This document shows, one piece after another, positions 1,987-24,219 of a DNA stretch of 64,000 nt. The notes under the pieces were generated by a model. The model was not told the DNA's origin, did no database searches, and saw nothing but the letters and a program-made list of their open reading frames with translations. A program made the position numbers and the translations under genes. The stretch's first letter is position 1. Each line of letters opens with the position of its first letter. The DNA comes from Laetmonice hystrix (taxonomy: Eukaryota), in NCBI GenBank assembly GCA_965235115.1, contig OZ249437.1, positions 31,310,001 through 31,374,000 of the forward strand. The letters run 5' to 3'.

Positions 1987-3109
1987 TTTGATTTAACACA
2001 GGACTGAAGAACAGAACACAACCTCAGACACTGAATCTGAGCCATATCAGACCCCCTTTGATTTAACACAGGCCTGGACTGAAGAACAGAACACAACCTC
2101 AGACACTGCATCTTAGCCATATCAGACTCCCTTTGATTTAACACCGGCCTGGACTGAAGAACAGAACACAACCTCAGACACTGAATCTGAGCCATATCAG
2201 ACCCCCTTTGATTTAACACAGGCCTGGACTAAAGAACAGAACACAAGCTCAGACACTGAATCTGAGCCATATCAGACCCCCTTTGATTTAACACAGGCCT
2301 GGACTGAAGAACAGAACACAACCTCAGACACTGCATCCCAGCCATATCAGACTCCCTTTGATTTAACACCGGCCTGGACTGAAGAACAGAACACAACCTC
2401 AGACACTGAATCTGAGCCATACCAGACCACCTTTGATTTAACACAGGCCTGGACTGAAGAACAGAAAACAACCTCAGACACTGAATCTGAGCCATATCAG
2501 ACCCCCTTTGATTTAACACAGGGCCTGGACTGAAGAACAGAACACAACCTCAGACACTGAATCTGAGCCATATCAGACCCCCTTTGATTTAACACAGGCC
2601 TGGACTGAAGAACAGAACACAACCTCAGACACTGAATCTGAGCCATACCAGACCACCTTTGATTTAACACAGGCCTGGACTGAAGAACAGAACACAACCT
2701 CAGACACTGAATCTGAGCCATATCAGACCCCCTTTGATTTAACACAGGCCTGGACTGAAGAACAGAACACAACCTCAGACACTGCATCCGAGCCATATCA
2801 GACCCCCTTTGATTTAACACAGGCCTGGACTGAAGAACAGAACACAACCTCAGACACTGCATCCGAGCCATATCAGACCCCCTTTGATTTAACACAGGCC
2901 TGGACTGAAGAACAGAACACAACCTCAGACACTGAATCTGAGCCATATCAGACCACCTTTGATTTAACACAGGCCTGGACTGAAGAACAGAACACAACCT
3001 TAGACATTGCATCCGAGCCATATCAGACTCCCTTTGATTTAACACCGGCCTGGACTGAAGAACAGAACACAACCTCAGACACTGCATTCCAGCCATATCA
3101 GACTCCCTT
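1987..3109. repeat. 75-bp minisatellite, about 15 copies
   Basis: Unit is CTTTGATTTAACACAGGCCTGGACTGAAGAACAGAACACAACCTCAGACACTGAATCTGAGCCATATCAGACCCC, with recurring variant positions. It explains the 25-aa periodic ORFs at 1950-3096. Confidence 0.97.
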
Positions 3110-9442: not shown

Positions 9443-9908
9443 TTAAGCTGGATCTCTGACGAACACGGTAATTGAGGAAGGACTGGATACTATCTAACAT
9501 TCAGTTTATTCATAAAGATTGTAGAATTAATAAATATTAGAAAATATACATGTATATCAAATAAATATTCATCTATTACTATGCACATCACAGAAAGTAT
9601 TCATCACATAATGTAGCTACAGGTAAAAACACTGAGGGGCACCTTTTATAAGTACCGTCAAATGGAGTGTTTGGCTTATTGATTCTTAACCACTTTTATA
9701 CCTACACTATAATAGATATATCTCTTGGAACAGTTATAGCACTTTCATAGTTGGCTTGTTTCCTTAGCCAACTGAATTTAATTCACCTACTGGTTTAACG
9801 TTAATTAGGTAATTAAGGCATTTGCAATATGTGCAACTAGACTGCTAGAGGCTGGATTTTAATGATGACACTAAATTAGCCCGTCAAGTAACAGTCCCTT
9901 GAGATTGG

Positions 9909-12900
9909 TTACACACTGAGCATTGTGTGATCACGGAGGTCTGATCTGTCAACTGAAGGCTGCCCGTCTGTGTTCGCACTCAAACCCCTCAGTCCGAGCA
10001 GCCATTTGGTGAGAAAGCCAAGGCTTGCGTTTTCTTGAAGTCTCACGGTTCTGGTGGCCAAGTCCATCTTCAGTGTCTGAAGTTTGTCCTTGGCCAGTGC
10101 ATAGAGGCGCTCCCGATCAAGGTCTCCCTATCGAAGATAAACAGTATTATGAAAATGGTACCACAGCAAATTATGGAATAGTGAACTCTCTGCCAATGAG
10201 TCCCTCCAAAAGATCCTACCGTTAAAAATACATGTGACCTTAACTGAACTTTCAAGGTCACTCGAAGTCATGGAAAATGGTGCCAAATCAAAGTTCAGAC
10301 CTACAGACAGAAGTTGGGTTGGGGGCTAAAAAACAGCAAAACGTCAATAATTTATTTACAACATATTACCTCCAGAGGTCCCCGTCTTATACGCATGATG
10401 AATTCCTTCACCTCTCCTGTACAGCGAACAGGTGGACATCTGCCGTGCAACAGGGCGTCAAGATTCCAAAGTTTATGGAAAATCTAAAACAAGCAGACGA
10501 AAAGAACAATTCAAGAACTCGGCTTTGTTTTATTTCTATGTTTTATAGGTTTCACATGCTTCTCGATAAAACTCTCACACTTCTTACCTGATAGAAAAGT
10601 TTTTTCTCTCGCGGAGAATCCATGTGTTTCCTACTCTCTATGGTACGCATGTTGTTCCTAATGAGACCTCTGTACTGCAGCATGAGGTGTTCACTCATAA
10701 ACAGGTGTCGCTGCGAACACAGCACCTGGTGGATAAATTAGGAACTAAATAACCTTCCCTGACCAAAGGTGGCTCTTTTTGACAGCTGGACCGGATATCT
10801 AAGTACGTGCTGCCACCTAGCGTTACAGGGGTAACATACGAATATTAGAGTCTGTCATGCGCTCCCACCGGCAGATACGTTTGTAGAACATTAAGAATTT
10901 TTTAATCGCTAACCCATCATTCACAGAGGATACCTCATGATTATAACGGCTAGACCGATCCCTTGTATATTCTAAAACACAGGTGGGTTTGTTAGCATTG
11001 TCCACATGTGCTCCCATGAAGGACATGCATATATCCCAAAGTAATAATTTGGAAACAATACATATTGACTAATTTTGTGATATACATGTGTACCTGGCAT
11101 GGTAACCTTTTAATTCTCCAGGTACGTTCTTTGATTAATCTTTTAAAAATAGATGAATGCCATCAAACGATTCAACCCGGGCAATCTAAAAGTACACGTA
11201 CTTCATAAACTAAGATGTATCGGTAGGGTAAGGCTTTGACTTTTCATTCCCTCCACCAAGAGCGTCACACAGGCTGGGGATACGGCTAATGGTGGGTTAG
11301 GAACCAAGGTGTCCACAATATGAAGAGCATAGTACCCCTTCCACATCAGAATTCAATGGAGCTTTTTTCACAGAGCTCATTGCTATACATTTTCAGAAGA
11401 AGACAGGATTTGATCTTACCTTCCATGCCTCACTGGCGTAGTCGACACCTTCCACAAATACAAGCTGAAACGGGGAAGTGACTAGTGAATTCTTTAAATG
11501 TATCCAGCGGCCGCTCAGCCCATTGGCGGATTTCAAATACTGACAAGAAAATTATTCAATACACAAGAACGTCTATAAAAACTGATGTCTCCTACTTCAG
11601 AAATCACAACGCTTCCTTTCAGAAGCATTTCTGCAAAAATTCGAGCCTCGTATGCGCCGTATTCAACAGTCAACTTTGGTCCCCTGTTCTCGATACATTC
11701 ACACTGTGGGCGTACACTGGATACGAGCTTCTACAGGAGAAAAATCATGAACAGAAAATACACAATGTCTGAATATATTCTTAACTTTTCATTGAAATCT
11801 GTAAACGTTCATACGTGGGTCTATACCTAGCGACCTTTGTATTAACCTGGGTTTCCAAGCCCGTTCTGTCTACCTTTGTATAAGCATTCAACAACCCCTC
11901 TACCCAAGGTTTCCGCGAATTCATAATACTGGAACCATACATGAGATACTTAACGATAACACGGATAGGACGTTTTTTGGGGAAAGTTTTAGATATGTCT
12001 GCGACATCCTACTTAGATCTTCATCAGTTTCCAATAGCTATTGGTTACCTCGGTCGGTTCGGTGTACACCACTACATAGTCCACGTCACTCTCTGGAGTG
12101 GACAGTCCGTACAGATAGCTTCCAGCACGTGCTATCATGACCACATTCTCTGGAGACATCCTAGCCACTGGTCCCCCAACCTTCTGGAGTAGGTCGACCA
12201 CATTGTCACACTCACCATCTGGAATACCTGCGGCAGATTCAATTCGAAATTAATAAAAAGGAAATCATGGATTTAATTCAAATTTTAGTAGAGATCTGAC
12301 TGAATTTCACTTTCATAGTTACTCGACTAGAGAAATCTGACCGGGACAAGCAAGCAGCTGCTGGCCATCTGTACGCAGTGACATCAGCCATCGGCCAAGC
12401 AGGTCATCTACCTCCTTCTGAGGCGTGAACTCTGACCCTTTCATCACGTCATCCACATCCTGCTTCCAGCTCATTAATATACTGAAGAGATCTGCCGTGG
12501 TGCTGGAGACTGATTCGTACTGTGGAGAACAAAGTCAAAGACACAAGTTATGCAAGTATATGATTATCGTTCACATTTACGTTCAGGCAAGCAGAAAAAT
12601 AAAGTTCCAACTCTTTCTACTACCATGCTTTGATCGTGTCGTGTCTAACTTGCTTCCCTGGTACATTTGGCTTACAATCAATGTCCCATCCGAGTTACAT
12701 AAATATTCCCAGCACATAAAAGCGGTGTTTCTCGCCTGATAAAACTGTGTCAACATCTCCTGTGCCTCTCGTGCTTTCCCAGACAATCTTTCTGTACTCA
12801 GAGTATCAACAGATAGTTGGCCCTTGGTTAACGCATCTTCAGCATTTTGTAGCAACCTAAACAAAAACACGATCACAACTGTACTCAGCCATCGCTACTT

Positions 12901-15047
12901 CAACTGACAGTAAAATTGTCATCTCGAAACCTTACTCTCTGTCAGACTTGTCAGGATAGTTTACCTTTACATATTTAGCCTCTTCCTTTATTATTATACA
13001 GTTTGTTTCTTAAAATTCAACAGGTAACCTACAGGTCAAATCACGTTATTTTCTTAACTGCACAGAAACAACGTATGGTGTGTGAGTTATAGTGCTAAGT
13101 GCATTCTGTCATGTCAGCCATTATACATAACAATAACATTTTTATGTTATATCAAGTTATATCACCTGAAAGATTCACAGAACTCAAAAAGAGTAGCACC
13201 ATTCCTCATCTTCATCAACCCAGACTTTCTGCTCTTTTTACCGACGCCTCCGATAGCCTGCCCTCGGCACTGCTCTAGAAAACCTCTCAAGCCTGGAGCC
13301 AAGAAGATAAACTTCATAGTGCTCACCGTACCAGTATCATAGAATACAAACAATTTTTATTCTACGCCAGTACAATGAAATGTATACATTGATATATCAA
13401 AGGATCAGTGTGTGCATCCAGGAGTACATCCAGAGGGGTGTGAGAATCAGGAGCAGAACTTTGGCAGCGAGAAATCAATTTGCTTTTCAAGTTGAAGTAA
13501 TAAACGTTTAATTTATCCATGCCGTGCTCTTCTAGTTCTTCATGAAGATGGGCTGTCTGTGCCTTACATTATTATAATCACCGAGCCTAAACTCTTAGCA
13601 TACATACCCTAATACGCATACACACTCCTGTATTTGGAATCTATGTTTTGTGGTGTATAGTATAAGTGAAACATATCCTGTAACAAACATGTTCAGCGCC
13701 ACCTGGCAGGGCTCAATGGAACTTGGGCAAACATTATACATGTAGGCCTACTCAACACGTAATTGTGTTATCAAAATCTCACTCAGTCGTTTCATAGATT
13801 ACAGCTCCTTCCAGGGGAAACAATGCTTCAACAAATCGTGACTTTCCCTTGGCAACATATTGTGCAAAATGGCCAGCCTCTGCTGCATAAAACCATCCCT
13901 GCAAAATAACAAGTCGTATATCTTTCTCAGCAATAGTGGATGGGTTCGCAATGGGCTTGTAAACAGACATACTGCAGTACTACTATAATGCCATCTCACA
14001 GTATGAGTTTCACATTAAATAAAGATAAAGACAAATCACCTGGTCATATACTTCCCTCTGCTGTTTAGATTTGGCATTAGCAGGTGTAAAGTTGATGTAG
14101 TCTGGGTTGGTGAAGACAACCAGTAGAGAGTTATGTTTGGCCTGCTGGCCTCGTTCCAGCTGTGTGGACATATACCAGGGACACGTCACAAGTTCAATGT
14201 AGATCACCCTTCCATCAACACCTGCAAATTTAATACAGTCCACAAAAATGTTATTTCATTGATATTATGAGTGTCAATTTAATTTATTTCCTTTGATGCA
14301 ATTAAGTACATTGTAATCAAGGAAAGAACATTGATATAGTAGGCTAAAGCTCATATTGAAATTAATGCAGTGACTCTTATTCACAGTTGGCTAAATTAAA
14401 AGTGTTTTGAATCTTTTCCCCCCAGAAACCCTTGGCTTTCACTATGTTGTCTTCTGAATAGTAAATAAAGAGATATTATTTATCTTTTTTAATATATAAT
14501 ACACTGACCTTTGATTACCTGGGTGACAAGTTCACAGATTTTAGTTTTAATCTCCGGTGTCAGAGACACTGGGACATGCATAAGAATCAATGCGCGAAGC
14601 TGTTGTAAAGTCAACTGGTCAAGTTCTGCACATTCCAGCTCAACTTCACTGTGCTCTATCTTAGACTTCACTGACTTCAAACTCTGCAAGATCTCTATGG
14701 CCTGCTCTGTCACTAAAAATGATAAAAACATTGTGAAATATCTTTTACAGCTCGGAATATACCATAACCCTTACACAAATTATGGTGAATAGGCCTACTG
14801 CCCTTTGTTCACAAGCAATTGCAAACTGCACATCTCATGATCCCATGGAAGTTAACAAAACAAGAAATTGTTCTGACTACATAGAGAGAGAGAGAGAGCT
14901 GAATTAAGTCACATTTTTCTCCTCTCAGACTTACATTTTGGACATGGTTTCTGTCTTTGTTCGACCTCTAAAGTAAATCGTTCCTGAGCTTGGAGGGCCA
15001 AGGTCACAGACTCTAGCAGTGCAATGTCCACCTCTGGAGGATGGCAA
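9909..15047 (-). CDS. Multi-exon gene encoding tandem Pol-beta-superfamily nucleotidyltransferase domains (RlaP/PF10127-like); domain 1 degenerate, domain 2 intact
   Basis: Exons 5'->3': 14935-15047, 14509-14712, 14040-14221, 13783-13898, 13166-13292, 12736 (or 12676)-12856, 12342-12519, 12049-12227, 11596-11730, 11420-11464, 10588-10725, 10370-10483, 9909-10127 (TAA). All joins are phase-consistent except 13783->13292. Domain 2 reads ARAGSYLYGLSTPESDVDYVVVY...VEYGAYEARIFAEMLLKG...LQYRG...KKLFYQIFHKL...FIMRIRRG...FLTKWLLGLR. About 620 aa reconstructed; start codon not located. Confidence 0.88.
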
Positions 15048-15234
15048 CTGGATAAAATACAAAACAAGACTGATTTTCATTTATGAGGCAATTGTTCCAT
15101 ATAATAGATCTATATGTTCCATATTATCCATATATATATCAAAAATCGTATTCACATACCGTACTCATATAATTACAGTTGCTTTGTAACATTCTTAAGA
15201 TTTTAAGATAATTTCTATCACCAATGGAATGAAG

Positions 15235-15387: not shown

Positions 15388-15899
15388 GAATGAGCTATAG
15401 TACAAGCAGTATACACGTAGGTAGTACAAATGTATATCATGTATCACATCACACAGATTCTGAGATTGTATATATGGTGCCTACCTTTTCATTGTAAAAC
15501 CTGACATCATGTCACATAACATCCAGCCTCTCCAAGCACTGGACTCTGAGTGAAGTTACTTGAAGTTGTACACTACGTAGAGCTTGATATAGTTCCAGGC
15601 TATATAGAGAACGTGAAGGTTTCGTCTACAAACTGTAATCAAAGAGAAACGCCAAAAGGGGGATGCAAGTGAGGTCAAGTCATCATAACCATACATGATA
15701 CAGTCAGATCAGGAAGCTGCGCCCAAACCGTAGATCCGCCCCACTTCATAAGACATATGACCAATAAAAGAAGCATACCATGGTACGGTTGACATTACAG
15801 TGTATACGACTTCAGTCTCGTTGAGTACACAGACCGTTAGGATCTCACCTGTACGCTTCATCACCTATTCATCAGTCCTATCAGTATCACGATTCACAG

Positions 15900-16261: not shown

Positions 16262-16789
16262 TGTAGCGGCATGGGGGAAGAAGTAGCACTGGGTCGGATG
16301 AGTTTCGACTGGAACTTTATTCGTCTGGTTACAACTTGTTCCTCTGGTTTCCTCGCTCGTTCCGTGAAAACTAAATAACAGCGAAATAACAGCGACCAGA
16401 AAAAATGACCAGAACATATTTAAACTTCAACTTAAATTTACAAAACGCGTAATCGCGCAAAAATACCACGTAGGGCTTACAGAACTGCTTACCTCTATCC
16501 ACCTTCTACAATACGCATATTCGCAGTTTTCGCAAATTCCCTCTTGCCGCTTTAAGCCAGTATTCACCTCTCATGGTGTCGCAAATGTGAAATGACCGGA
16601 CCGATGGTAACTCAAAAATGTGACCGGTCAAATGGTCAGACTGGTCACATGGTCTGCTGACCAGTATATAAATAAATTAACTTGTTCAGGGCCACAGGTG
16701 GCGACACCTGCTAATTTAGTGACCTCTATTGGAGGGTTTGGGAACTGCTGGTTCCCGCGCATTTATAAATGAAACCATCTTTCATTACA
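16262..16789 (-). repeat. 3' LTR of BEL element
   Basis: Identical to 23692-24219 except one base (T at 16272 vs G at 23702). Contains minus-strand AATAAA (about 16316), a donor GAG|GTAAGC (about 16490) and a TATA-like TTTATATA (about 16668). Confidence 0.98.
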
Positions 16790-16930
16790 TGGCTCCCCAA
16801 ATTTACTCGTAAATTTTCCTATCAGCATTACATAATACTTATTACATGATGTCACTACATCATAATCACATCACAAGTCATCTCTCATTTCTCAGAACTC
16901 GTATCACATGTCAAAATTATAATACATTCT

Positions 16931-17085
16931 CACAAATCATCTCATGTTTCACAAATCATATCTCATGTTTCACAAATCATATCTCATGTTTCACAAATCA
17001 TATCTCATGTTTCACAAATCATATCTCATGTTTCACAAATCATATCTCATGTTTCACAAATCATATCTCATGTTTCACAAATCAT
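16931..17085. repeat. 21-bp tandem repeat (about 7 copies) in the 3' UTR of the BEL element
   Basis: Unit ATCTCATGTTTCACAAATCAT, near-perfect copies. Confidence 0.95.
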
Positions 17086-17226
17086 CTTCAACTACATTTG
17101 TAATTCTTTATCAACTACGAATTTTTAAACATATATATTACTACACTGTTACTACAATCTATTTACACTCATGGCTCCCCGTTGGGGATTACCCCAAATT
17201 TACTTAGAAGAAAATGATCACGACAT

Positions 17227-20200
17227 TTAGTCAGAACCTTCTAAAAGCAACACCAGTTTGTGAATAGGACGTTTTAGGAACGTCGTTGGGCGCAGTGGTT
17301 TTCCTTTCTTATCCAATGTTGAATTGGCCATTGCTAGCTTAACAGTGCGAACTAAACCATCCTTGCTGAAGTAAGTCTCTACGACTCGACCCAATGGCCA
17401 CTGGCAACGATGCAAATCTTCATCTTTGACAAATACTATGTCGTCTACCTTTAAGTTTCGTTTAGGATGTACCCATTTATGTCTAGACTGTAAGTTTTGG
17501 AGATATTCCTTGCGCCAACGGTACCAAAATTCATTTACCAAGTGTTGAACCCTTCTCCATCTTTTCCTCGCATACAAATCAGACCTGTCAAAATCGTTTT
17601 TAGGAGGAAGGAGATTACCGGTTTTCATTGTCAAGAGATGATTAGGTGTGATGGGTGACAAAGACAAAGGGTCGTTCACATTGTCAACAGTAAGGGGCCT
17701 GCTGTTTACTATACAAGTGACTTCATACATTACAGTGCGTAAGGAATCATCATTTAGTTGACCACTACCTTGGTCCATGAGAGCATTAAGGACGTTTCTC
17801 ACTGTTCTTATCTGACGTTCCCAGGAACCGCCCATGTGACTTGCAGAAGGGACATTAAATTTGAATTCAATGTAATCGCATCCTTTAGACAAAAGGAATG
17901 TTCTGATGTGAGTTTGGTCTGTGTGAGACAGGGCTTTGTACAGTTCAGAATGAGCGCCAACAAAATTGGTGCCACGGTCACATCGTAACAAACGGATTGG
18001 GCCACGAATGGCGAGAAACCTTCTCAGTGCATTCATAAATGCGTCAGTACTCAAATCAATGGACACTTCTACATGAATTGCCCTGGAGACTAAGCATGTA
18101 AAAAGACACCCATATCTCTTTACTTCCTTCCGACCCATCTTGACCAACCATGGCCCAAAAAAATCCACTCCAACATATGTAAAAGGAGGGGAAGGGTTTA
18201 TCCTGTCATACGGCAAATCTGACATTTTTTGTTCTTGTAATCGACCACGGTACTTCCTACATTTCACGCACTGTCGTATGTGATTAGCAACAGCTGCACT
18301 ACATCCAACCACCCAGAACCCATTACTTCTAATTTCGTTGACAGTCGTGGTTCTACCTTGATGTCCACTTTTCTCATGATGAAAGTAGGAAACAATGAGT
18401 TCAGAAATGTGGCTCTTTCTGGGTAGGATAACAGGATGTTTTACATGATCTGATAGGGTCGCCCTTCCTAAACGACCTCCTACACGCAAGATTCCTTTAT
18501 CATCGATAAAAGGGTCAAGCTGGGACAAGGAACTAGTTCGCCTCAACATTCCTTTGGTTTCTTTAACGTTCTCATGATTTGTATGTTTGATGTTTTTAAG
18601 AATAGTTAGTTCTTCTTTCAAACTGTTTGCTTGCACTATTCTGATGATTTCAGATTCCGCTTGCTCTAGCTCCTCTACTGTGATCGGGTCGATTTGTTCA
18701 TAGTTTACAGACGATTGAACAGGAGACCTTTTTACCCGTTTTTGCATTAGGAGAGCTTTGAACTTAAGACATCTGGCTATCGCTCGTTTAGCTCTAAACC
18801 AATCAGAGAAGTAGTCTAACCTACTTAGTTCAAACCCTGCAGAAGCCGTTTGAGTGCTTAACACTTGTATCTTTTTGAGCTCAGGGTCATGTGGCTGTAA
18901 ATCTGGGATAGTCTGCTCTTTGTAGGAAGAAATGTCCCTTTCCCATAAAAAATCAGGACCGGTTATCCACTTTGGGTTACTCACAAACTCCTCAGCTGAC
19001 ATACCTCTAGAAACTTTGTCAGCTGGGTTTTCAGTGGATTTGACAAAATTCCATTGAGAAGAGCATGTATGGTTTCGAATTTGTTGAACACGATTGGCTA
19101 CAAACACGTGAAAGCGGCGTGACTCGTTAGCTATGTAGCCTAATACTACTTTGGAATCGGTCCAGTAGGTCTCAGTAATATTCTCGTACTCTAGTTCCTC
19201 TTGGAAGAACGTGCTCATGCGAACTGACACGAGAGCTGCGGAAAGCTCTAATCGCGGGATTGTGACTGTTTTCAAGGGGGCTACTCTTGATTTGCTCATG
19301 ACTAGTGAACAATGCACTCTTTGTTTCTCGTTAATCAATCGCAGATATGAGCATTGCCCATATCCCACACTGCTAGCGTCAGAAAAGTGATGTAATTCTG
19401 CGGTTTCAATTTGGCCAAAATTGGCGGGATGGTAGCATCTTGGAATGCGTACGGACTCCAGTTGCACCAGGCCGTTTCGCCATTGTTCCCATTCCGATCG
19501 AAGAGGATCAGGGAGACTACTGTCCCAATCCAGATTATCTCGACAGAGTTCCTGTAAGATCAGTTTTCCTTTAAGAATAACCGGTGCTAGGAAACCTAGA
19601 GGGTCATATACTGAGTTTACTGTCGACAAAATACCCCGTCTAGTCAAAGGTTTGTCTTTGAGAGTTATGCGGAAACAAAACTCGTCTACTTCTATGCACC
19701 AATAGACCCCTAAGGCTCGTTCTACTGGAACAGTGGTTTTGAGAAAGTTGAGATTTTGCATTCCACTCGAGAGTTCTTCTGTAGGTAAGGATTGCATAAC
19801 TTCCTCTGAATTCGATACGAATTTGTGCAAATGGACTCCACCTTCGTAACAGATTTTCTGTGACCTTTTGATCAAGTCAATGGCTTCAACGGGGCTGGAC
19901 ACCGACTTAAGGCCGTCATCAACGTAAAAGTTGCGATGAATGAACTGAGCTGCGTCCGAGCCATATTTGTTTTCATTATCAGAGGCGATACGCTTCAGAC
20001 CGAAATTAGCGCACCCTGGTGAGGACGCCGCTCCGAAGAGGTGAACGTTCATTCGGTACTCAACAGGTTTCGATTCACAATCTCCGTTTTTCCACCAAAG
20101 GAACCTCAAGAAGTTGCGATGGTTCTTATCTACCTTAAATTGATAGAACATTTGTTCAATATCACATACGAATGCGGTTTGTTCTTGTCGAAATCGGCAT

Positions 20201-23200
20201 AAAACTCCTAATAAGGTATTTGTGAGAGGGGGACCTGGTAGGAGGTGGTCATTCAAGGACTCGCCTTGAAATCGGGCACTACAGTCGAAGACGACTCTTA
20301 ATTTGTTCTTCTTTTGATGGTAAATACCATGATGGGGAATGTAATAAACTTGCCCATCATCTTGATCAAGCTCAGAATTCGGAACCCGTTCCGCATAACC
20401 TTTAGCGATTACGTTTTCCATGAACTCAACATAATCTCGGCGGTATTTTGGGTCATTTTGCAAGCGCTTCTGAAGCGGTTTCAATCGACTAAGGGCCAAC
20501 GATTTGTTGTTTGGTAATTTCGGTTGATCCTGTCGGAAAGGGAGAGGCATCTCATAATGCTTGTCAGACCGTTGATGTACACCTTCCTCGAGAATTGCCA
20601 TGAACCTTCGGTCTTCATGAGAGTGAGGCTCAAGTGTTTTACGGTCACTGAAGTCGATCTCCATCATATCTAGAATGTTTCTTGGCCCGATGACCTCTTT
20701 GATGGTTACCTTGGATGAGAAGTGGGCTACAGTTTTAGTTCCAATACCTTCTATACCCTCATGCGATCTAGCAATCGAAGGGAAGACCTCATATGTGAGT
20801 ATCCTATGACTCACGCCAATAGGATCACAGTTTAGTTGAGACTTATCAAACTTATCTTCACCTACTACACCAACGACACTCCATCCTAGCACTGTTTTTT
20901 GTGCGAAGGGTCCATCAGATATAGGCAAGATTATATCATTGGGAGCAAGAGCCTTTGAACAGTTATACCCAATTAATAGTCCTACCTTACAGTCATTTAA
21001 GGGCATAAGTTTGTGAGCAATAGGTTCCAAGTGGGGCCACCTATTGGCAGTTTCAGTCGTAGGTATATGAGCACGATTGGCGGGAATCATGCCGCGTGAA
21101 AACACGGGGGGCAAAGCAATAGTTTCAGTGCTATCATGCCCTCGCACCCTTAGGCCAGTAACACGGGTACTGTCGATCAGCTGATCCTTTACTGACATTG
21201 TTGACAGTAACAATTGGGTTGGAACACCTGTAATGTCTAATTCATCTCGAGTACTATCGAGGACAAACGACGTGTCGGACTGGGTGTCCAGTAAGGCGTA
21301 TACTAGGATCTCTCTATCTGGACGGTCCATGTGCGAAACCCAAACGGGTACGATCGTAGAGCATTTAACTGGACAGTCTGACTCAGTGAAATTACTCACT
21401 CTTGCTTTAGTTGAGGTAGACTGTACCTCCCTAATAGGGGGAACCTTATTTCCTACGTTGTCAGGCTTCGGTGTATTCTTTGTCTCGATATTAGGCTGCG
21501 TGCCTACCCTATTCCCTAATTCGTAGATATCACCATGTAGGGATGTTGCATGTTGTTTGGAACAAATCTTACAAGTAAGTCTATTCCTACACAGCTTCGA
21601 TCTGTGTCCAGGTTTAAGACAACCAAAGCAAAGATTGTTTTGTCGAATGTGTGCTTTCCTGTCAGCTAGAGATTTCGAAAAGAAATGGTGACAGGTATCT
21701 AGGTTATGTGACCCCTTACATAGAGTGCAGGACCCTGGATTAACCTGCTTACTTTGTCTCTCGTATCTGACATCAGCACCCGCAACAAAGGAACTAAAAC
21801 CTGAAGTTTGTTTAGGCTTAGTTATCTTAGTATTTCTTTGAATGTCTGAGAACTGATTCTGCTTGACCGCTTGAAATGACGTTATTGGGTGACAAGCTAT
21901 GTCAGCTTCCCTAATCACAAATCTCTGAAACTCACTGAAGGGCGGAAAGGTACCCGAACGGGTCTTTGTGTCGGATACTATCCTTCCCCACCGTGGAATC
22001 ATCCAATCTGGTAGTTTAGACAATAATTTCCGATTTTCGTGATCGTCATCTAGTATCTTCAAACTTGGAATAGTCTCTCTAGCAATGTTACATTGTCTTA
22101 GGAAATCGGCAAATTTACGCAAAGCTATGCCGTCACGAGCTGGTATCCTAGGCCAAGAATCTAGGCGTTCGCGAAACGCGTTGGCAATGACGAATGGGTT
22201 GCCGTATCGTTCTTCAAGTAGGGTTTTAGCTTCCTCATATGCGCTAGAAGAACTTATCAAAAAGTAACCTTCTATTGCTTCCTTCGCAACACCACCAATG
22301 TACCTTTTCAGGTAATGTATCCTCTCATTTGCGGGTATCCCCTTCTGGTCAATGAGTATTTCAAAGGTCACTTTCCAATCCGGGTACTTTAGCGGATCCC
22401 CGGTGAATACGACTGGCTCTGGTACAGGGATACGACTCAAATTAATATGTTCGGAAAGTAGCTTAGTTAACTCAAACACTTGTTGAGAAGGATCATTTCT
22501 TACTTCATTTACAAGGGGCGGTAATGAAACCGGAGTCGAAGACGTTTGACCCAGCTCAGGTGGATGTTGGGTTGTACCATTAGGACCACTAGGAGCATTT
22601 GTATAGGTCCCTGTATCCTTCGTGTGAGACCCAGAGAAAGTACTAGTGGGGAGATTCTTAGGAGTGAAATCAGTAGCACTAGGGTTCAAAGCACTTGTCA
22701 CGACAATGGGTGACGTGACTGGTTTAACAAGCGCGTCAGTAGTATTTGTGTTGGTGGCATGTGTTACAAGATAGTTTTCTACATATTCATGTGTACCATC
22801 AGGTGCAATTTCTTCAGTTACGAGAGTATCTTGGGCTTCATGTTCAAACCTTGAAATTGCCTCAAATTTTGCTTCTGCAACATGTAACGCTTTCTCAGTT
22901 TGGATTTTCTCTAACTCAGTCTTCTTAACATTTTCAATTTCCACATATGCAAGTTTGGTTCTTAAGGCTGCGGCCTCAGCGGCTATTTCTGCCCGTTTAG
23001 AAGTGCCAGAACTATTTGAACGGCGAGACCTCTGAGATTTACTACTACGTGAGGAACCAGACCTTCCAGAACCACGCTCAGATCTAACCGACTCAATCTC
23101 CCTAATGACCTCGGTTATACGCTTTGTGAGAGAGTAATGGTTATTTTCAACACGCTCGAACTTCGTACAATCTTCACTATCAATATCTACAGGTAATAAT

Positions 23201-23553
23201 CTATTTAGTTGTTCATACGCAGTTAAGACATGTTTCATTTCCGTTTCTAACTCAATACGCTCCCTTTGAAGCAAAGTGGAATCGTTGCTATCGGTAATTA
23301 AGGTCTCCAGTTTGCTGGCACGCCGGCACCATTTGCTAATACTATGTCTGAAAGCTTTGCGTTTTTCGTTAATTTGCCATTCGAGTCCTTTTTCTGTAAA
23401 TATTCGTGTACGCTCACTCGTTCTACGACTCTCATGCATATCTTTATCGATAGGCGCGCCGTCTATGGCTGTAGCGGGTATAATACCTCCTTCTGCAGCG
23501 GGTATAATACCTCCTTCTGCCATTATTAGCCTACTATTGAAAGGTCTTGCCAC
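17227..23553 (-). CDS. BEL/Pao gag-pol polyprotein, 2108 aa
   Basis: Uninterrupted ORF with a DUF1759-like gag (FTGDPLKYPDWKVTFE), Cys/His knuckles (CFGCLKPGHRSKLC, CKICSKQHATSLH), protease (ALLDTQSDTSF), RT (FYVDDGL), RNase H/peptidase A17 region (HHFSDASSVGYG), integrase (HEKSGHQG...CVKC; VDFFGP; CDRGTNF; GSWERQI) and a DUF5641-like tail (WRRVQHLVNEFWYRWRKEYL). Confidence 0.98.
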   Translation of the reverse strand: MARPFNSRLIMAEGGIIPAAEGGIIPATAIDGAPIDKDMHESRRTSERTRIFTEKGLEWQINEKRKAFRHSISKWCRRASKLETLITDSNDSTLLQRERIELETEMKHVLTAYEQLNRLLPVDIDSEDCTKFERVENNHYSLTKRITEVIREIESVRSERGSGRSGSSRSSKSQRSRRSNSSGTSKRAEIAAEAAALRTKLAYVEIENVKKTELEKIQTEKALHVAEAKFEAISRFEHEAQDTLVTEEIAPDGTHEYVENYLVTHATNTNTTDALVKPVTSPIVVTSALNPSATDFTPKNLPTSTFSGSHTKDTGTYTNAPSGPNGTTQHPPELGQTSSTPVSLPPLVNEVRNDPSQQVFELTKLLSEHINLSRIPVPEPVVFTGDPLKYPDWKVTFEILIDQKGIPANERIHYLKRYIGGVAKEAIEGYFLISSSSAYEEAKTLLEERYGNPFVIANAFRERLDSWPRIPARDGIALRKFADFLRQCNIARETIPSLKILDDDHENRKLLSKLPDWMIPRWGRIVSDTKTRSGTFPPFSEFQRFVIREADIACHPITSFQAVKQNQFSDIQRNTKITKPKQTSGFSSFVAGADVRYERQSKQVNPGSCTLCKGSHNLDTCHHFFSKSLADRKAHIRQNNLCFGCLKPGHRSKLCRNRLTCKICSKQHATSLHGDIYELGNRVGTQPNIETKNTPKPDNVGNKVPPIREVQSTSTKARVSNFTESDCPVKCSTIVPVWVSHMDRPDREILVYALLDTQSDTSFVLDSTRDELDITGVPTQLLLSTMSVKDQLIDSTRVTGLRVRGHDSTETIALPPVFSRGMIPANRAHIPTTETANRWPHLEPIAHKLMPLNDCKVGLLIGYNCSKALAPNDIILPISDGPFAQKTVLGWSVVGVVGEDKFDKSQLNCDPIGVSHRILTYEVFPSIARSHEGIEGIGTKTVAHFSSKVTIKEVIGPRNILDMMEIDFSDRKTLEPHSHEDRRFMAILEEGVHQRSDKHYEMPLPFRQDQPKLPNNKSLALSRLKPLQKRLQNDPKYRRDYVEFMENVIAKGYAERVPNSELDQDDGQVYYIPHHGIYHQKKNKLRVVFDCSARFQGESLNDHLLPGPPLTNTLLGVLCRFRQEQTAFVCDIEQMFYQFKVDKNHRNFLRFLWWKNGDCESKPVEYRMNVHLFGAASSPGCANFGLKRIASDNENKYGSDAAQFIHRNFYVDDGLKSVSSPVEAIDLIKRSQKICYEGGVHLHKFVSNSEEVMQSLPTEELSSGMQNLNFLKTTVPVERALGVYWCIEVDEFCFRITLKDKPLTRRGILSTVNSVYDPLGFLAPVILKGKLILQELCRDNLDWDSSLPDPLRSEWEQWRNGLVQLESVRIPRCYHPANFGQIETAELHHFSDASSVGYGQCSYLRLINEKQRVHCSLVMSKSRVAPLKTVTIPRLELSAALVSVRMSTFFQEELEYENITETYWTDSKVVLGYIANESRRFHVFVANRVQQIRNHTCSSQWNFVKSTENPADKVSRGMSAEEFVSNPKWITGPDFLWERDISSYKEQTIPDLQPHDPELKKIQVLSTQTASAGFELSRLDYFSDWFRAKRAIARCLKFKALLMQKRVKRSPVQSSVNYEQIDPITVEELEQAESEIIRIVQANSLKEELTILKNIKHTNHENVKETKGMLRRTSSLSQLDPFIDDKGILRVGGRLGRATLSDHVKHPVILPRKSHISELIVSYFHHEKSGHQGRTTTVNEIRSNGFWVVGCSAAVANHIRQCVKCRKYRGRLQEQKMSDLPYDRINPSPPFTYVGVDFFGPWLVKMGRKEVKRYGCLFTCLVSRAIHVEVSIDLSTDAFMNALRRFLAIRGPIRLLRCDRGTNFVGAHSELYKALSHTDQTHIRTFLLSKGCDYIEFKFNVPSASHMGGSWERQIRTVRNVLNALMDQGSGQLNDDSLRTVMYEVTCIVNSRPLTVDNVNDPLSLSPITPNHLLTMKTGNLLPPKNDFDRSDLYARKRWRRVQHLVNEFWYRWRKEYLQNLQSRHKWVHPKRNLKVDDIVFVKDEDLHRCQWPLGRVVETYFSKDGLVRTVKLAMANSTLDKKGKPLRPTTFLKRPIHKLVLLLEGSD

Positions 23554-23691
23554 GCAAAATCGAAAGTTCTCACACTGGCGTCACTTGAAGCAAGCTTGAA
23601 CTCGTTGAAGAGTGGTTGAGTGGTTGGTCACTTGCCGCATGTCGCCGCACCAGGCTCGCACCAGTAGACGCACACTGTGTAGAGTTTTCAC

Positions 23692-24219
23692 TGTAGCGGC
23701 AGGGGGGAAGAAGTAGCACTGGGTCGGATGAGTTTCGACTGGAACTTTATTCGTCTGGTTACAACTTGTTCCTCTGGTTTCCTCGCTCGTTCCGTGAAAA
23801 CTAAATAACAGCGAAATAACAGCGACCAGAAAAAATGACCAGAACATATTTAAACTTCAACTTAAATTTACAAAACGCGTAATCGCGCAAAAATACCACG
23901 TAGGGCTTACAGAACTGCTTACCTCTATCCACCTTCTACAATACGCATATTCGCAGTTTTCGCAAATTCCCTCTTGCCGCTTTAAGCCAGTATTCACCTC
24001 TCATGGTGTCGCAAATGTGAAATGACCGGACCGATGGTAACTCAAAAATGTGACCGGTCAAATGGTCAGACTGGTCACATGGTCTGCTGACCAGTATATA
24101 AATAAATTAACTTGTTCAGGGCCACAGGTGGCGACACCTGCTAATTTAGTGACCTCTATTGGAGGGTTTGGGAACTGCTGGTTCCCGCGCATTTATAAAT
24201 GAAACCATCTTTCATTACA
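23692..24219 (-). repeat. 5' LTR of BEL element
   Basis: 528 bp, TG...CA. On the minus strand it is followed by GTGAAAACTCTAC rather than a TGG-type PBS. Confidence 0.98.

What the first reader, a model, noticed from the sequence alone, without database searches (positions are those of the whole stretch)
9909..12227. Intron-containing RlaP-like (Pol-beta superfamily) nucleotidyltransferase gene in an animal
Seen: seven short phase-consistent exons splice to ENVVMIARAGSYLYGLSTPESDVDYVVVYTEPTEKLVSSVRPQCECIENRGPKLTVEYGAYEARIFAEMLLKGSVVISELVFVEGVDYASEAWKVLCSQRHLFMSEHLMLQYRGLIRNNMRTIESRKHMDSPREKKLFYQIFHKLWNLDALLHGRCPPVRCTGEVKEFIMRIRRGPLEGDLDRERLYALAKDKLQTLKMDLATRTVRLQENASLGFLTKWLLGLRG. Known: GS-x-x-YG-x4-SD-x-D followed by YE..F...L.KG and a helical tail ending in WL..LR is the pattern of the RlaP/PF10127-type nucleotidyltransferases. 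These are known mainly from bacteria and phages and have been linked by genome context to RNA ligase/RNA repair and conflict systems. I do not recognise it as a standard vertebrate or insect gene. Inference: this is a domesticated, possibly horizontally acquired or patchily retained, nucleotidyltransferase that could act in RNA end repair or tagging, or in protein NMPylation or antiviral defence, in an invertebrate.
Basis: partly seen in the sequence, partly recalled or inferred. Interest (0 to 1): 0.88.

Follow-up and report, generated by a model that had tools for sequence, protein, structure and literature searches.

The report
Animal RlaP-type RNA nucleotidyltransferase gene
A real, spliced and transcribed invertebrate gene encodes an enzyme of the RlaP family, known from bacteria and phages as an adder of nucleotides to damaged RNA ends. 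It is an old animal gene kept in sponges and spiralians, not a recent bacterial import.

Summary
On the minus strand, six (not seven) exons between 12227 and 9909 have canonical splice sites.

They are exons 9-14 of a 14-exon, single-copy gene (15522-9909, about 645 aa). Full-length orthologues occur in molluscs, a brachiopod, annelids, a nemertean and sponges, and two-domain relatives in protists.

The C-terminal half is an RlaP (PF10127) nucleotidyltransferase:
- Orthologues pass Pfam's cut-off.
- The window's own spliced domain scores 75 bits against a profile built only from prokaryotic and phage RlaPs.
- The orthologue's model matches YcgL and MJ0002 (TM 0.7), not TENT, cGAS or OAS.
- G-S, D-x-D and a third carboxylate are intact.

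The N-terminal half is a degenerate duplicate of the same fold.

Intron positions and phases are shared from sponge to spiralians, and the eukaryotic sequences form one clade. This means ancient vertical descent with many losses, not recent transfer.

The function (adding nucleotides to RNA 3' ends, as shown for Pseudomonas RlaP) is inferred.

Caveat: upstream of the finding, exon 5 is frame-broken in the assembled haplotype. Another haplotype has 44 more bases there.

The scan's only other note on this gene (s1-324841) lies on this same window.

The parts
12049..12227 (-). Exon 9. Linker helix and start of the active NTase domain, carrying G405-S406 (12123-12118), D417 (12087-12085) and D419 (12081-12079).
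   Evidence: AG/GT sites. X4 joints 12227/12342 and 11730/12049. Pfam on this exon alone: NTP_transf_2 25.6 bits (cut-off 21) and RlaP 19.9 bits (cut-off 23). Residue mapping.
11596..11730 (-). Exon 10. Strand carrying the likely third carboxylate E452 (11664-11662), then E457, then the 'YEAR.F..LLKG' helix with K467.
   Evidence: The alignment with bacterial members places E452 opposite their Asp. The columns are invariant.
11420..11464 (-). Exon 11 (15 codons; Y483, W488).
   Evidence: The intron on each side is shared in position and phase with Owenia, Mytilus and Ephydatia.
10588..10725 (-). Exon 12. First helices of the helical lobe (E501, Q506, G509, K531, Y534).
10370..10483 (-). Exon 13. 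Helical lobe (H538-K539, P552, R568).
9909..10127 (-). Exon 14 coding part. Last helices including R599, R602, E605 and the terminal W615-L-L-x-L-R620-G helix, a 24-residue unconserved tail, and the stop TAA at 9911-9909.
   Evidence: Bacterial members end in the same '..D.LL.hR' helix.
9584..9908 (-). 3' UTR, at least this far.
   Evidence: The X4 contig (record 24) runs unbroken from 10126 down to 9584.
12342..12519 (-). Exon 8. End of the N-terminal degenerate copy and the linker.
   Evidence: X4 joints 12227/12342 and 12519/12736. The intron 12735-12520 has a GC donor.
12736..12856 (-). Exon 7.
   Evidence: X4 joints. Homology.
13166..13292 (-). Exon 6, starting in phase 1 ('x|GC TTG AGA' = x-L-R-G-F).
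   Evidence: Acceptor 13292 is seen in X4. Owenia and Mytilus have an intron of the same position and phase.
13759..13898 (-). Exon 5 of the degenerate copy, as inherited (phase 0 in, phase 1 out). In the window it is 140 nt, out of frame, with TGA at 13781-13779.
   Evidence: Homology on both sides of the break ('..AVIYETT' and 'ILITQL'). The X3 contig holds 41 unaligned letters plus a 3-nt overlap at 13780-13782 (table 8). 140+44 gives the required phase. The near-invariant Trp is missing here.
14040..14221 (-). Exon 4. Core of the degenerate copy: 'TCPWY' stands where G-S would be, and 'KHN' where D-x-D would be.
   Evidence: X4 joint 14221/14509. Alignments A1/A6. hhalign of the N half against the C half: 93.6%, E 2e-7.
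14509..14712 (-). Exon 3 (N-terminal helices).
   Evidence: X4 record 26. Homology.
14935..15047 (-). Exon 2, holding the conserved 'A.Q.QER' motif.
   Evidence: X4 loose end at 15049. tblastn.
15485..15522 (-). Exon 1 coding part. First in-frame ATG after an upstream stop; which ATG is used is not known.
   Evidence: The 30-letter loose end of the X4 contig is found only at 15487-15516.

Best explanation
The stretch is the 3' half (exons 9-14) of a single-copy, 14-exon, transcribed animal gene.

The product has about 645 residues:
- an N-terminal helical segment;
- a catalytically dead copy of the RlaP fold;
- a C-terminal RlaP-family (PF10127) Pol-beta-type nucleotidyltransferase with an intact active site (G405-S406, D417, D419, E452), a helical lobe rich in invariant Arg/Lys, and the family's terminal helix.

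Shown:
- gene structure and transcription;
- family membership by profile and by fold;
- the internal duplication;
- purifying selection;
- inheritance from before the sponge-bilaterian split, with retention in sponges and spiralians.

Inferred: like the Pseudomonas RlaP enzymes, the only members studied biochemically, the live domain binds an NTP and two metal ions. It adds one or a few nucleotides, without a template, to the 3'-OH of damaged or trimmed RNA such as tRNA. The end then becomes usable again, possibly upstream or downstream of the RtcB ligase that the genome also encodes.

Also inferred: the dead copy packs against the live one as a built-in partner, a pseudo-dimer that shapes the substrate cleft or regulates it.

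In the assembled haplotype, exon 5 (in the dead copy) appears to carry a 44-bp frame-breaking deletion. This particular allele may therefore not make the full protein. The species' other haplotype probably does.

The confidence given is for the whole statement. By tier: real RlaP-family animal gene about 0.95; catalytically competent about 0.8; RNA 3'-end nucleotide addition about 0.5.
For: Gene structure and expression
- Exons and splice sites.
- cDNA-like contig with exact joints.
- End-to-end alignment of the 645-aa model: 46% identity to Lingula and Owenia, 36-43% to molluscs, 33% to Ephydatia.
- Single locus in the 627-Mb genome.

Family membership
- Pfam RlaP scores of 43-52 bits in orthologues, against a cut-off of 23.
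- The window's own spliced C-domain scores 75 bits against an HMM built only from 33 prokaryotic and phage members. 200 shuffles score 0.2 bits or less.
- AF2 model of the Lingula C-domain: pLDDT 93.
- Its best AFDB-Swiss-Prot matches are YcgL (TM 0.69) and MJ0002 (0.66-0.70), from the two control genomes that ring for PF10127.
- Phage NTases match at TM 0.6-0.79.
- 76 of the 100 nearest ESM-Atlas clusters carry RlaP.
- All 33 invariant columns are kept.

Duplication
- hhalign: 93.6%, E 2e-7, 195 collinear columns.
- Full-length AF2 model: pLDDT 91.5, pTM 0.88.

Constraint
- Between haplotypes, 13 synonymous against 7 non-synonymous changes.
- Every listed indel is non-coding.

Age
- Intron positions and phases are shared with an annelid, a mollusc and a sponge.
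- The eukaryote clade has 100/100 support and the spiralian clade 96/98.

Activity of the family
- bioRxiv 10.64898/2025.12.29.696909.
- RtcB is present on contig 13.
Against: - No biochemical datum exists for any eukaryotic member.
- The only characterised RlaPs share about 25-30% identity with this domain. They are stand-alone enzymes encoded in RNA-ligase operons, a context that does not exist here.
- The third catalytic residue is Glu, whereas the preprint describes three strictly conserved Asp.
- Pfam and AF2 were run on orthologues, because a spliced protein cannot be handed to those tools by reference.
- Transcript support is one contig from one sample. Its 5' end joins exon 4 directly to exon 6, which shifts the frame.
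- The absence from other animal phyla rests on capped protein searches, not on genome searches.
- The domain-packing idea rests on pTM alone. I could not inspect coordinates.
Confidence: 0.6

Rival explanations
1. The enzyme fold is RlaP-like, but the substrate is not an RNA end. The protein would instead adenylylate a small molecule (as ANT(4')/LinB do), NMPylate a protein, or make an oligonucleotide signal (as Hailong HalB or CD-NTases do) in immunity.
For: The best solved-structure matches are ANT(4'), LinB and HalB, because no RlaP structure is in the PDB copy. NTase families change substrate readily (general knowledge). Fusion to a dead copy resembles the regulatory or sensor arrangements of immune NTases (inference).
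Against: Those matches are weak (TM 0.30-0.51, 11-14% identity). Against RlaP-family models the TM is 0.66-0.79. Profile searches pick RlaP first. The many invariant Arg/Lys in the helical lobe suit a nucleic-acid substrate (inference).
Confidence: 0.22
2. The copy in this window is a broken allele. Exon 5 carries a 44-bp deletion that shifts the frame, so the intact-looking C-terminal domain is not translated from this haplotype. The gene may be on its way to loss in this lineage. This reading concerns the allele only and is compatible with the main explanation for the gene.
For: Exon 5, bounded as in Owenia and Mytilus (phase 0 to phase 1), is 140 nt here, with TGA at 13781-13779. The X3 contig has 44 extra bases exactly there, and 184 nt restores the phase. 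The near-invariant Trp of this segment is missing. The X4 contig skips exon 5 and runs straight into a stop. The family has been lost in many animal lineages.
Against: The inserted letters were not seen. An in-frame GT-AG alternative (13783 to 13321) exists. The coding SNP pattern shows constraint, including 3 synonymous to 1 non-synonymous in exon 5 itself. All catalytic and invariant residues are intact.
Confidence: 0.6
3. The gene was recently acquired by horizontal transfer from a bacterium or phage into this invertebrate lineage, or the stretch is a contaminant.
For: The family is overwhelmingly bacterial and viral. Many animal groups lack it.
Against: The gene has 13 introns. Nine have the same position and phase in at least two of annelid, mollusc and sponge, and a tenth lies two columns from a phase-0 intron in all three. 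It lies in a chromosome-scale contig next to an animal-type Pao LTR element. The eukaryote clade has 100/100 support with a topology like the species tree. The best prokaryotic or phage identity is 21-33%. Two-domain relatives occur in protists.
Confidence: 0.03
4. It is a divergent member of a pan-metazoan NTase family (TENT/TUTase, cGAS/Mab21, OAS).
For: Weak sub-threshold Pfam hits to MTPAP-like_central (13-14 bits against a cut-off of 27).
Against: No such family passes threshold. Fold matches to TUTase, Trf4/TENT4, CD-NTase and NF90 have TM 0.18-0.26.
Confidence: 0.01

Closest known systems
Bacterial RlaP (PF10127), e.g. Pseudomonas fluorescens / P. aeruginosa RlaP (bioRxiv 10.64898/2025.12.29.696909)
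   Same: Same Pfam family. Same layout: an NTase lobe, a helical lobe and a terminal helix that returns to the NTase lobe. Same G-S, D-x-D and 'YE..F..L.KG...LE.L' motifs, and the same C-terminal '..LL.hR' helix.
   Different: This one is eukaryotic and has introns. It is fused behind a dead copy of itself and an N-terminal helical segment. Its third carboxylate is Glu, not Asp. It has no RNA-ligase operon. Identity is about 25-30%. Its activity is untested.
Phage RlaP-type nucleotidyltransferases (T4 NrdC.11 group; Streptomyces, Gordonia, Mycobacterium and Bacillus phages)
   Same: tblastn covers 83-87% of the domain at 21-28% identity, E down to 2e-16. Predicted folds match at TM 0.6-0.79. 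In Gordonia phage Bantam the gene lies two genes from an RNA ligase.
   Different: These are single-domain proteins of 226-341 aa in the fetched examples. They fall on the other side of the 100/100 branch from all eukaryotic members.
B. subtilis YcgL and M. jannaschii MJ0002 (uncharacterised)
   Same: Best whole-domain structural matches (TM 0.66-0.70, 252-264 aligned columns). They come from the two control genomes that ring for PF10127.
   Different: 15% identity, single-domain, function unknown.
ANT(4') kanamycin nucleotidyltransferase / LinB / Hailong HalB
   Same: A Pol-beta NTase lobe followed by a helical lobe. These are the best hits among solved structures.
   Different: TM is only 0.30-0.51 and identity 11-14%. 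No profile match. Their substrates are antibiotics or dATP (oligo-dA signal).
Orthologous 'uncharacterized protein' / 'Polymerase nucleotidyl transferase domain-containing protein' entries of molluscs, Lingula, Owenia, Lineus and sponges
   Same: Same three-part architecture (helical N-terminus, dead copy, live RlaP) and about the same length. 33-46% identity end to end, with shared introns.
   Different: None in kind; they are orthologues. None has been studied. The window's allele differs by the exon-5 break.

Membership tests
RlaP (Pfam PF10127) | Match to the family profile above the curated cut-off (23 bits) | tested here: met
   Orthologues score 42.9-52.5 bits. The window's exon 9 alone scores 19.9 bits, below the cut-off, as expected for 37 of 249 positions. 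The window's spliced C-domain scores 75 bits against an HMM of 33 prokaryotic and phage members, while shuffles score 0.2 or less. The spliced protein itself could not be given to the Pfam tool.
RlaP (Pfam PF10127) | Pol-beta NTase catalytic set: G-S loop, D-x-D strand, third carboxylate | tested here: met
   G405-S406, D417, D419 and E452 are invariant in 31 orthologues. E452 aligns with the Asp of bacterial members. It is Glu, not the 'strictly conserved' Asp of the preprint.
RlaP (Pfam PF10127) | C-terminal helical lobe plus a last helix that packs back on the NTase lobe | tested here: met
   The AF2 model of the Lingula orthologue (pLDDT 93) has the same order of elements. TM is 0.69 to YcgL and 0.66-0.70 to MJ0002 over the whole domain. 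The terminal 'WLL.VRG' aligns with bacterial '.LLL.IR'. This was tested on an orthologue that is 46% identical overall.
RlaP (Pfam PF10127) | Gene neighbourhood with an RNA ligase (the origin of the name) | tested here: not met
   This is a eukaryotic gene without an operon. The genome's only RtcB match is on another contig, and no ORF of 150 aa or more other than the Pao element lies near the gene. This is a contextual feature, not a criterion of the Pfam family.
RlaP (Pfam PF10127) | Adds one or two NMP to the 3'-OH of (damaged) RNA | not testable with these tools
   Known only for two Pseudomonas enzymes.
NTP_transf_2 (PF01909; generic Pol-beta NTase superfamily) | Profile match above the cut-off (21 bits) | tested here: met
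   Exon 9 scores 25.6 bits. This is a superfamily-level statement only.
Metazoan TENT/TUTase, cGAS/Mab21, OAS | Best profile or fold match is to one of these families | tested here: not met
   No Pfam hit above threshold; MTPAP-like_central scores 13-14 bits against a cut-off of 27. TM is 0.18-0.26 to TUTase, Trf4/TENT4, CD-NTase and NF90.
ANT(4')/LinB aminoglycoside-lincosamide NTases; Hailong HalB | Whole-domain fold match with sequence-profile support | tested here: inconclusive
   Foldseek E 1.8e-5 to 1e-3, but TM 0.30-0.51 and rmsd 8-15 A. No sequence match in the PDB. Related architecture; membership not shown.

The most novel reading that the evidence does not exclude
The fused dead-plus-live RlaP protein is an ancestral animal RNA-surveillance or immune factor. 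On this reading the dead copy senses a damaged or foreign RNA end. The live copy then tags it, or makes a short oligonucleotide signal. That would make it a sponge-to-spiralian counterpart of prokaryotic NTase defence systems, lost in vertebrates and ecdysozoans.
Probability: 0.1. Interest if true: 0.8.

Novelty: new variant of a known kind. Interest (0 to 1): 0.5.

Why it matters
RlaP enzymes have only just been characterised, and only in bacteria. There they restore RNA ends that are too damaged for ligation alone.

This gene shows that the same enzyme family was present in the first animals. It already carried most of today's introns and was already fused to an inactive copy of itself. It is still conserved under selection in sponges, molluscs, brachiopods, annelids and nemerteans, while the usual model animals seem to lack it.

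That gives RNA-repair biology a testable animal case. It is also a clean example of a pseudoenzyme-enzyme tandem, and a marker of differential gene loss.

It is not evidence of bacterial-to-animal gene transfer.

Tried and rejected
Searches that gave little or nothing
- Pfam on single exons: only exon 9 gave hits; exons 10, 12, 13 and 14 gave none.
With P0148 alone it found no relative. The two-sequence bacterial alignment A3 worked.
- Sequence searches of the PDB, with a single protein and with a 33-sequence profile, found no RlaP structure.
- The search for homologous proteins with the domain-only fragment P0030 gave only six hits, because of the word filter.
- The look-up of encoding contigs had no record for the Lingula protein.

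Models I dropped
- My first model of the exon 5/6 junction (13783 to 13321) is in frame and gave the 645-aa protein used for the comparisons. I now rate it below the inherited structure (donor 13759, acceptor 13292). The reasons: Owenia and Mytilus have a phase-1 intron there, and the transcript uses 13292.
- Other in-frame mini-exons listed have no support.
- The residue numbers and coordinates printed are wrong, because an alignment option dropped residues. One search replaces them.

Readings I rejected
- Recent horizontal transfer, contamination, and membership of TENT, cGAS or OAS (see rivals).

Limits
- The window's spliced protein could not be handed to Pfam, AlphaFold or the large searches by reference. 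Orthologues stood in for it there, and the window's own protein was tested in scripts.
Full report
**What is in the sequence**

The gene lies on the minus strand. Each is preceded by AG and followed by GT, and all junctions are in phase 0.
- The first exon really starts at 12227.
- The last one runs on for 24 more codons to TAA at 9911-9909.
- That makes six exons, not seven.

**Transcript support**

No run is labelled RNA. One of the four runs that hold the stretch (X4) holds only about a third of its words, and its contigs skip introns.

A 1611-nt contig joins 10127/10370, 10483/10588, 10725/11420, 11464/11596, 11730/12049 and 12227/12342. These are exactly the predicted sites. It continues upstream through 12519/12736 (a GC-AG intron) and 12856/13166. 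Downstream it runs to 9584. Its 5' end is described under the exon-5 caveat below.

This is one contig from one sample of one study. It shows that the spliced form exists. It does not show how much of it is made.

**The whole gene**

A loose end of an X4 contig at 15049 matches only 15487-15516. This gives a first coding exon at 15522-15485.

An exhaustive HMMER search with exon 9 found 79 proteins. Among them were full-length proteins of about 617 aa. Aligning these to the window defined 14 exons.

The 645-aa model aligns end to end:
- Lingula: 46%
- Owenia: 46%
- Chiton, gastropods and bivalves: 36-43%
- The sponge Ephydatia: 33%

Two-domain relatives at 28-32% come from an unnamed eukaryote with a compact genome (intronless gene; neighbours include MatE and protein kinases), from Amorphochlora, and from other metagenomic protists.

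The genome has a single locus.

**Family**

- Orthologues hit Pfam RlaP (PF10127) at 43-52 bits against a cut-off of 23. Nothing else passes threshold except the generic NTP_transf_2.
- The window's exon 9 alone gives NTP_transf_2 25.6 bits and RlaP 19.9 bits.
- Spliced sequences cannot be passed to that tool.
- Against that HMM the window's C-domain scores 75 bits, 200 shuffles score 0.2 or less, and the N half scores 7 bits.
- An AlphaFold model of the Lingula C-domain (pLDDT 93) matches B. subtilis YcgL and M. jannaschii MJ0002 best, at TM 0.66-0.70 over the whole domain.
- It also matches many phage nucleotidyltransferases at TM 0.6-0.79.
- ANT(4'), LinB and HalB reach only 0.30-0.51. TUTase, Trf4/TENT4, CD-NTases and NF90 reach 0.18-0.26.
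- The ESM Atlas neighbours are RlaP clusters.
- The alignment with bacterial members is collinear from the G-S loop to the last helix.
- In the window's protein, G405-S406, D417, D419, E452 (opposite the bacterial third Asp), E457, K467 and all other invariant columns are intact.

**The N-terminal half**

The scan's other note on this window (s1-324841) proposed a degenerate second copy. Profile-profile comparison of the N halves with the C halves of the orthologues gives 93.6% probability, E 2e-7, over 195 collinear columns.
- 'TCPWY' stands where G-S would be.
- 'KHN' stands where D-x-D would be.
- The full-length model is confident as a whole (pLDDT 91.5, pTM 0.88). This suggests that the two copies pack together, but I could not inspect the interface.

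**Origin**

A maximum-likelihood tree of 54 domains puts all 23 eukaryotic sequences on one side of a 100/100 branch.
- Sponges fall outside a 96/98 spiralian clade.
- Molluscs are together (98/96).
- The window's protein is next to nemertean, brachiopod and annelid sequences.

I mapped the introns of the Owenia, Mytilus and Ephydatia genes.
- All five introns inside the finding, and the one at its 5' edge, have the same alignment column and phase in all three species.
- So do three or four of the upstream introns.
- The closest prokaryotic or phage proteins are 21-33% identical.

This excludes a recent transfer into an invertebrate. It points to a gene of the first animals, probably older, that many lineages lost.

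The prokaryotic sample is small and was chosen by motif. The deep origin of the eukaryotic clade is therefore open. A 610-aa tandem form exists in an Akkermansiaceae genome.

**Constraint**

The DNA contigs differ from the window at 20 coding sites: 13 synonymous and 7 non-synonymous. Every listed indel is non-coding.

**A caveat outside the finding's span: exon 5**

In Owenia and Mytilus the exon equivalent to 13898-13759 enters in phase 0 and leaves in phase 1. The window has the matching donor (13759, after 'ILITQL') and the acceptor 13292 that the transcript uses.

The evidence that this exon is broken in the window:
- The exon is 140 nt, out of frame, and has TGA at 13781-13779.
- The family's near-invariant Trp is missing.
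- The X3 contig carries 41 unaligned letters plus a 3-nt overlap at exactly 13780-13782.
- 140+44 nt restores the phase (table 8).
- The 5' end of the X4 contig (30 letters) joins 13292 to 14040. This skips exon 5 and runs into a stop.
- Another X4 contig is unspliced across it.

I read this as a heterozygous 44-bp deletion in the assembled haplotype, with odds of about 0.6. I did not see the inserted letters.

**Function**

The only experimental work I found is a 2025 preprint. It reports that:
- Pseudomonas RlaPs add one or two NMP to RNA 3'-OH and prefer damaged RNAs;
- they are needed to restore aminoacylation of heavily damaged tRNA;
- the crystal structure has the two-lobe-plus-terminal-helix build;
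- 'a small number' of family members are eukaryotic.

By membership, an intact active site and a basic helical lobe, I take the same chemistry as the most likely activity here (about 0.5). A different substrate or a signalling role is the main rival. RtcB is present in the genome, so a repair pathway is feasible. Nothing links the two genes.

**Verdict**

The finding is real and well read, and its family assignment is right. It is a previously unstudied animal branch of a known enzyme family with a new pseudoenzyme-enzyme architecture. It was inherited vertically rather than acquired.

Noticed in passing
window 16262-23991 (minus strand): A full-length BEL/Pao LTR retrotransposon. Its two 300-nt LTRs (16262-16561 and 23692-23991) are 100% identical. 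One open 2108-aa frame (17227-23553) carries Peptidase_A17, Integrase_H2C2, DUF1759 and DUF5641. It ends about 740 bp upstream of the gene's first coding exon, so it may sit in or near the promoter. Observed only.
   Followed up: partly
window 13780-13782 (exon 5 of the same gene): The contig of run X3 has about 44 extra bases here relative to the window and to runs X1, X2 and X4. The window reads TGA at 13781-13779. This is probably a heterozygous frame-breaking deletion in the assembled haplotype.
   Followed up: partly
window 11641: The cDNA-like run X4 reads C where the window and all three DNA runs read T. That is A to G in mRNA sense and synonymous (CGA to CGG, R459). It could be an allele of another individual or an editing site. 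It rests on one contig only.
   Followed up: no
window 12520-12735: A GC-AG intron (donor GC at 12735-12734), used in the transcript contig.
   Followed up: yes
window 2001-3109: A tandem array of 14.8 copies of a 75-nt unit (95% matches). It produces long spurious repetitive ORFs on the minus strand.
   Followed up: partly
L015:2182-4014 (Akkermansiaceae MAG); AFDB cluster A0A858RIP9: A 610-aa bacterial open frame holds two RlaP-like domains in tandem, and the first also has G-S and D-x-D. A 622-aa AFDB entry aligns over both halves of the animal protein. Tandem RlaP fusions therefore exist outside eukaryotes. Their relation to the animal architecture is untested.
   Followed up: no
BFVD hits: The RlaP-like fold also turns up in giant-virus proteins (Klosneuvirus, Yasminevirus, Terrestrivirus) and in baculovirus HE65 / ORF132 proteins (TM 0.5-0.66). 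These are possible links between eukaryote-infecting viruses and the eukaryotic branch.
   Followed up: no
L030:792-1945 (Gordonia phage Bantam): The phage's RlaP-type nucleotidyltransferase lies two genes upstream of an annotated RNA ligase. This is the linkage that gave the family its name.
   Followed up: no
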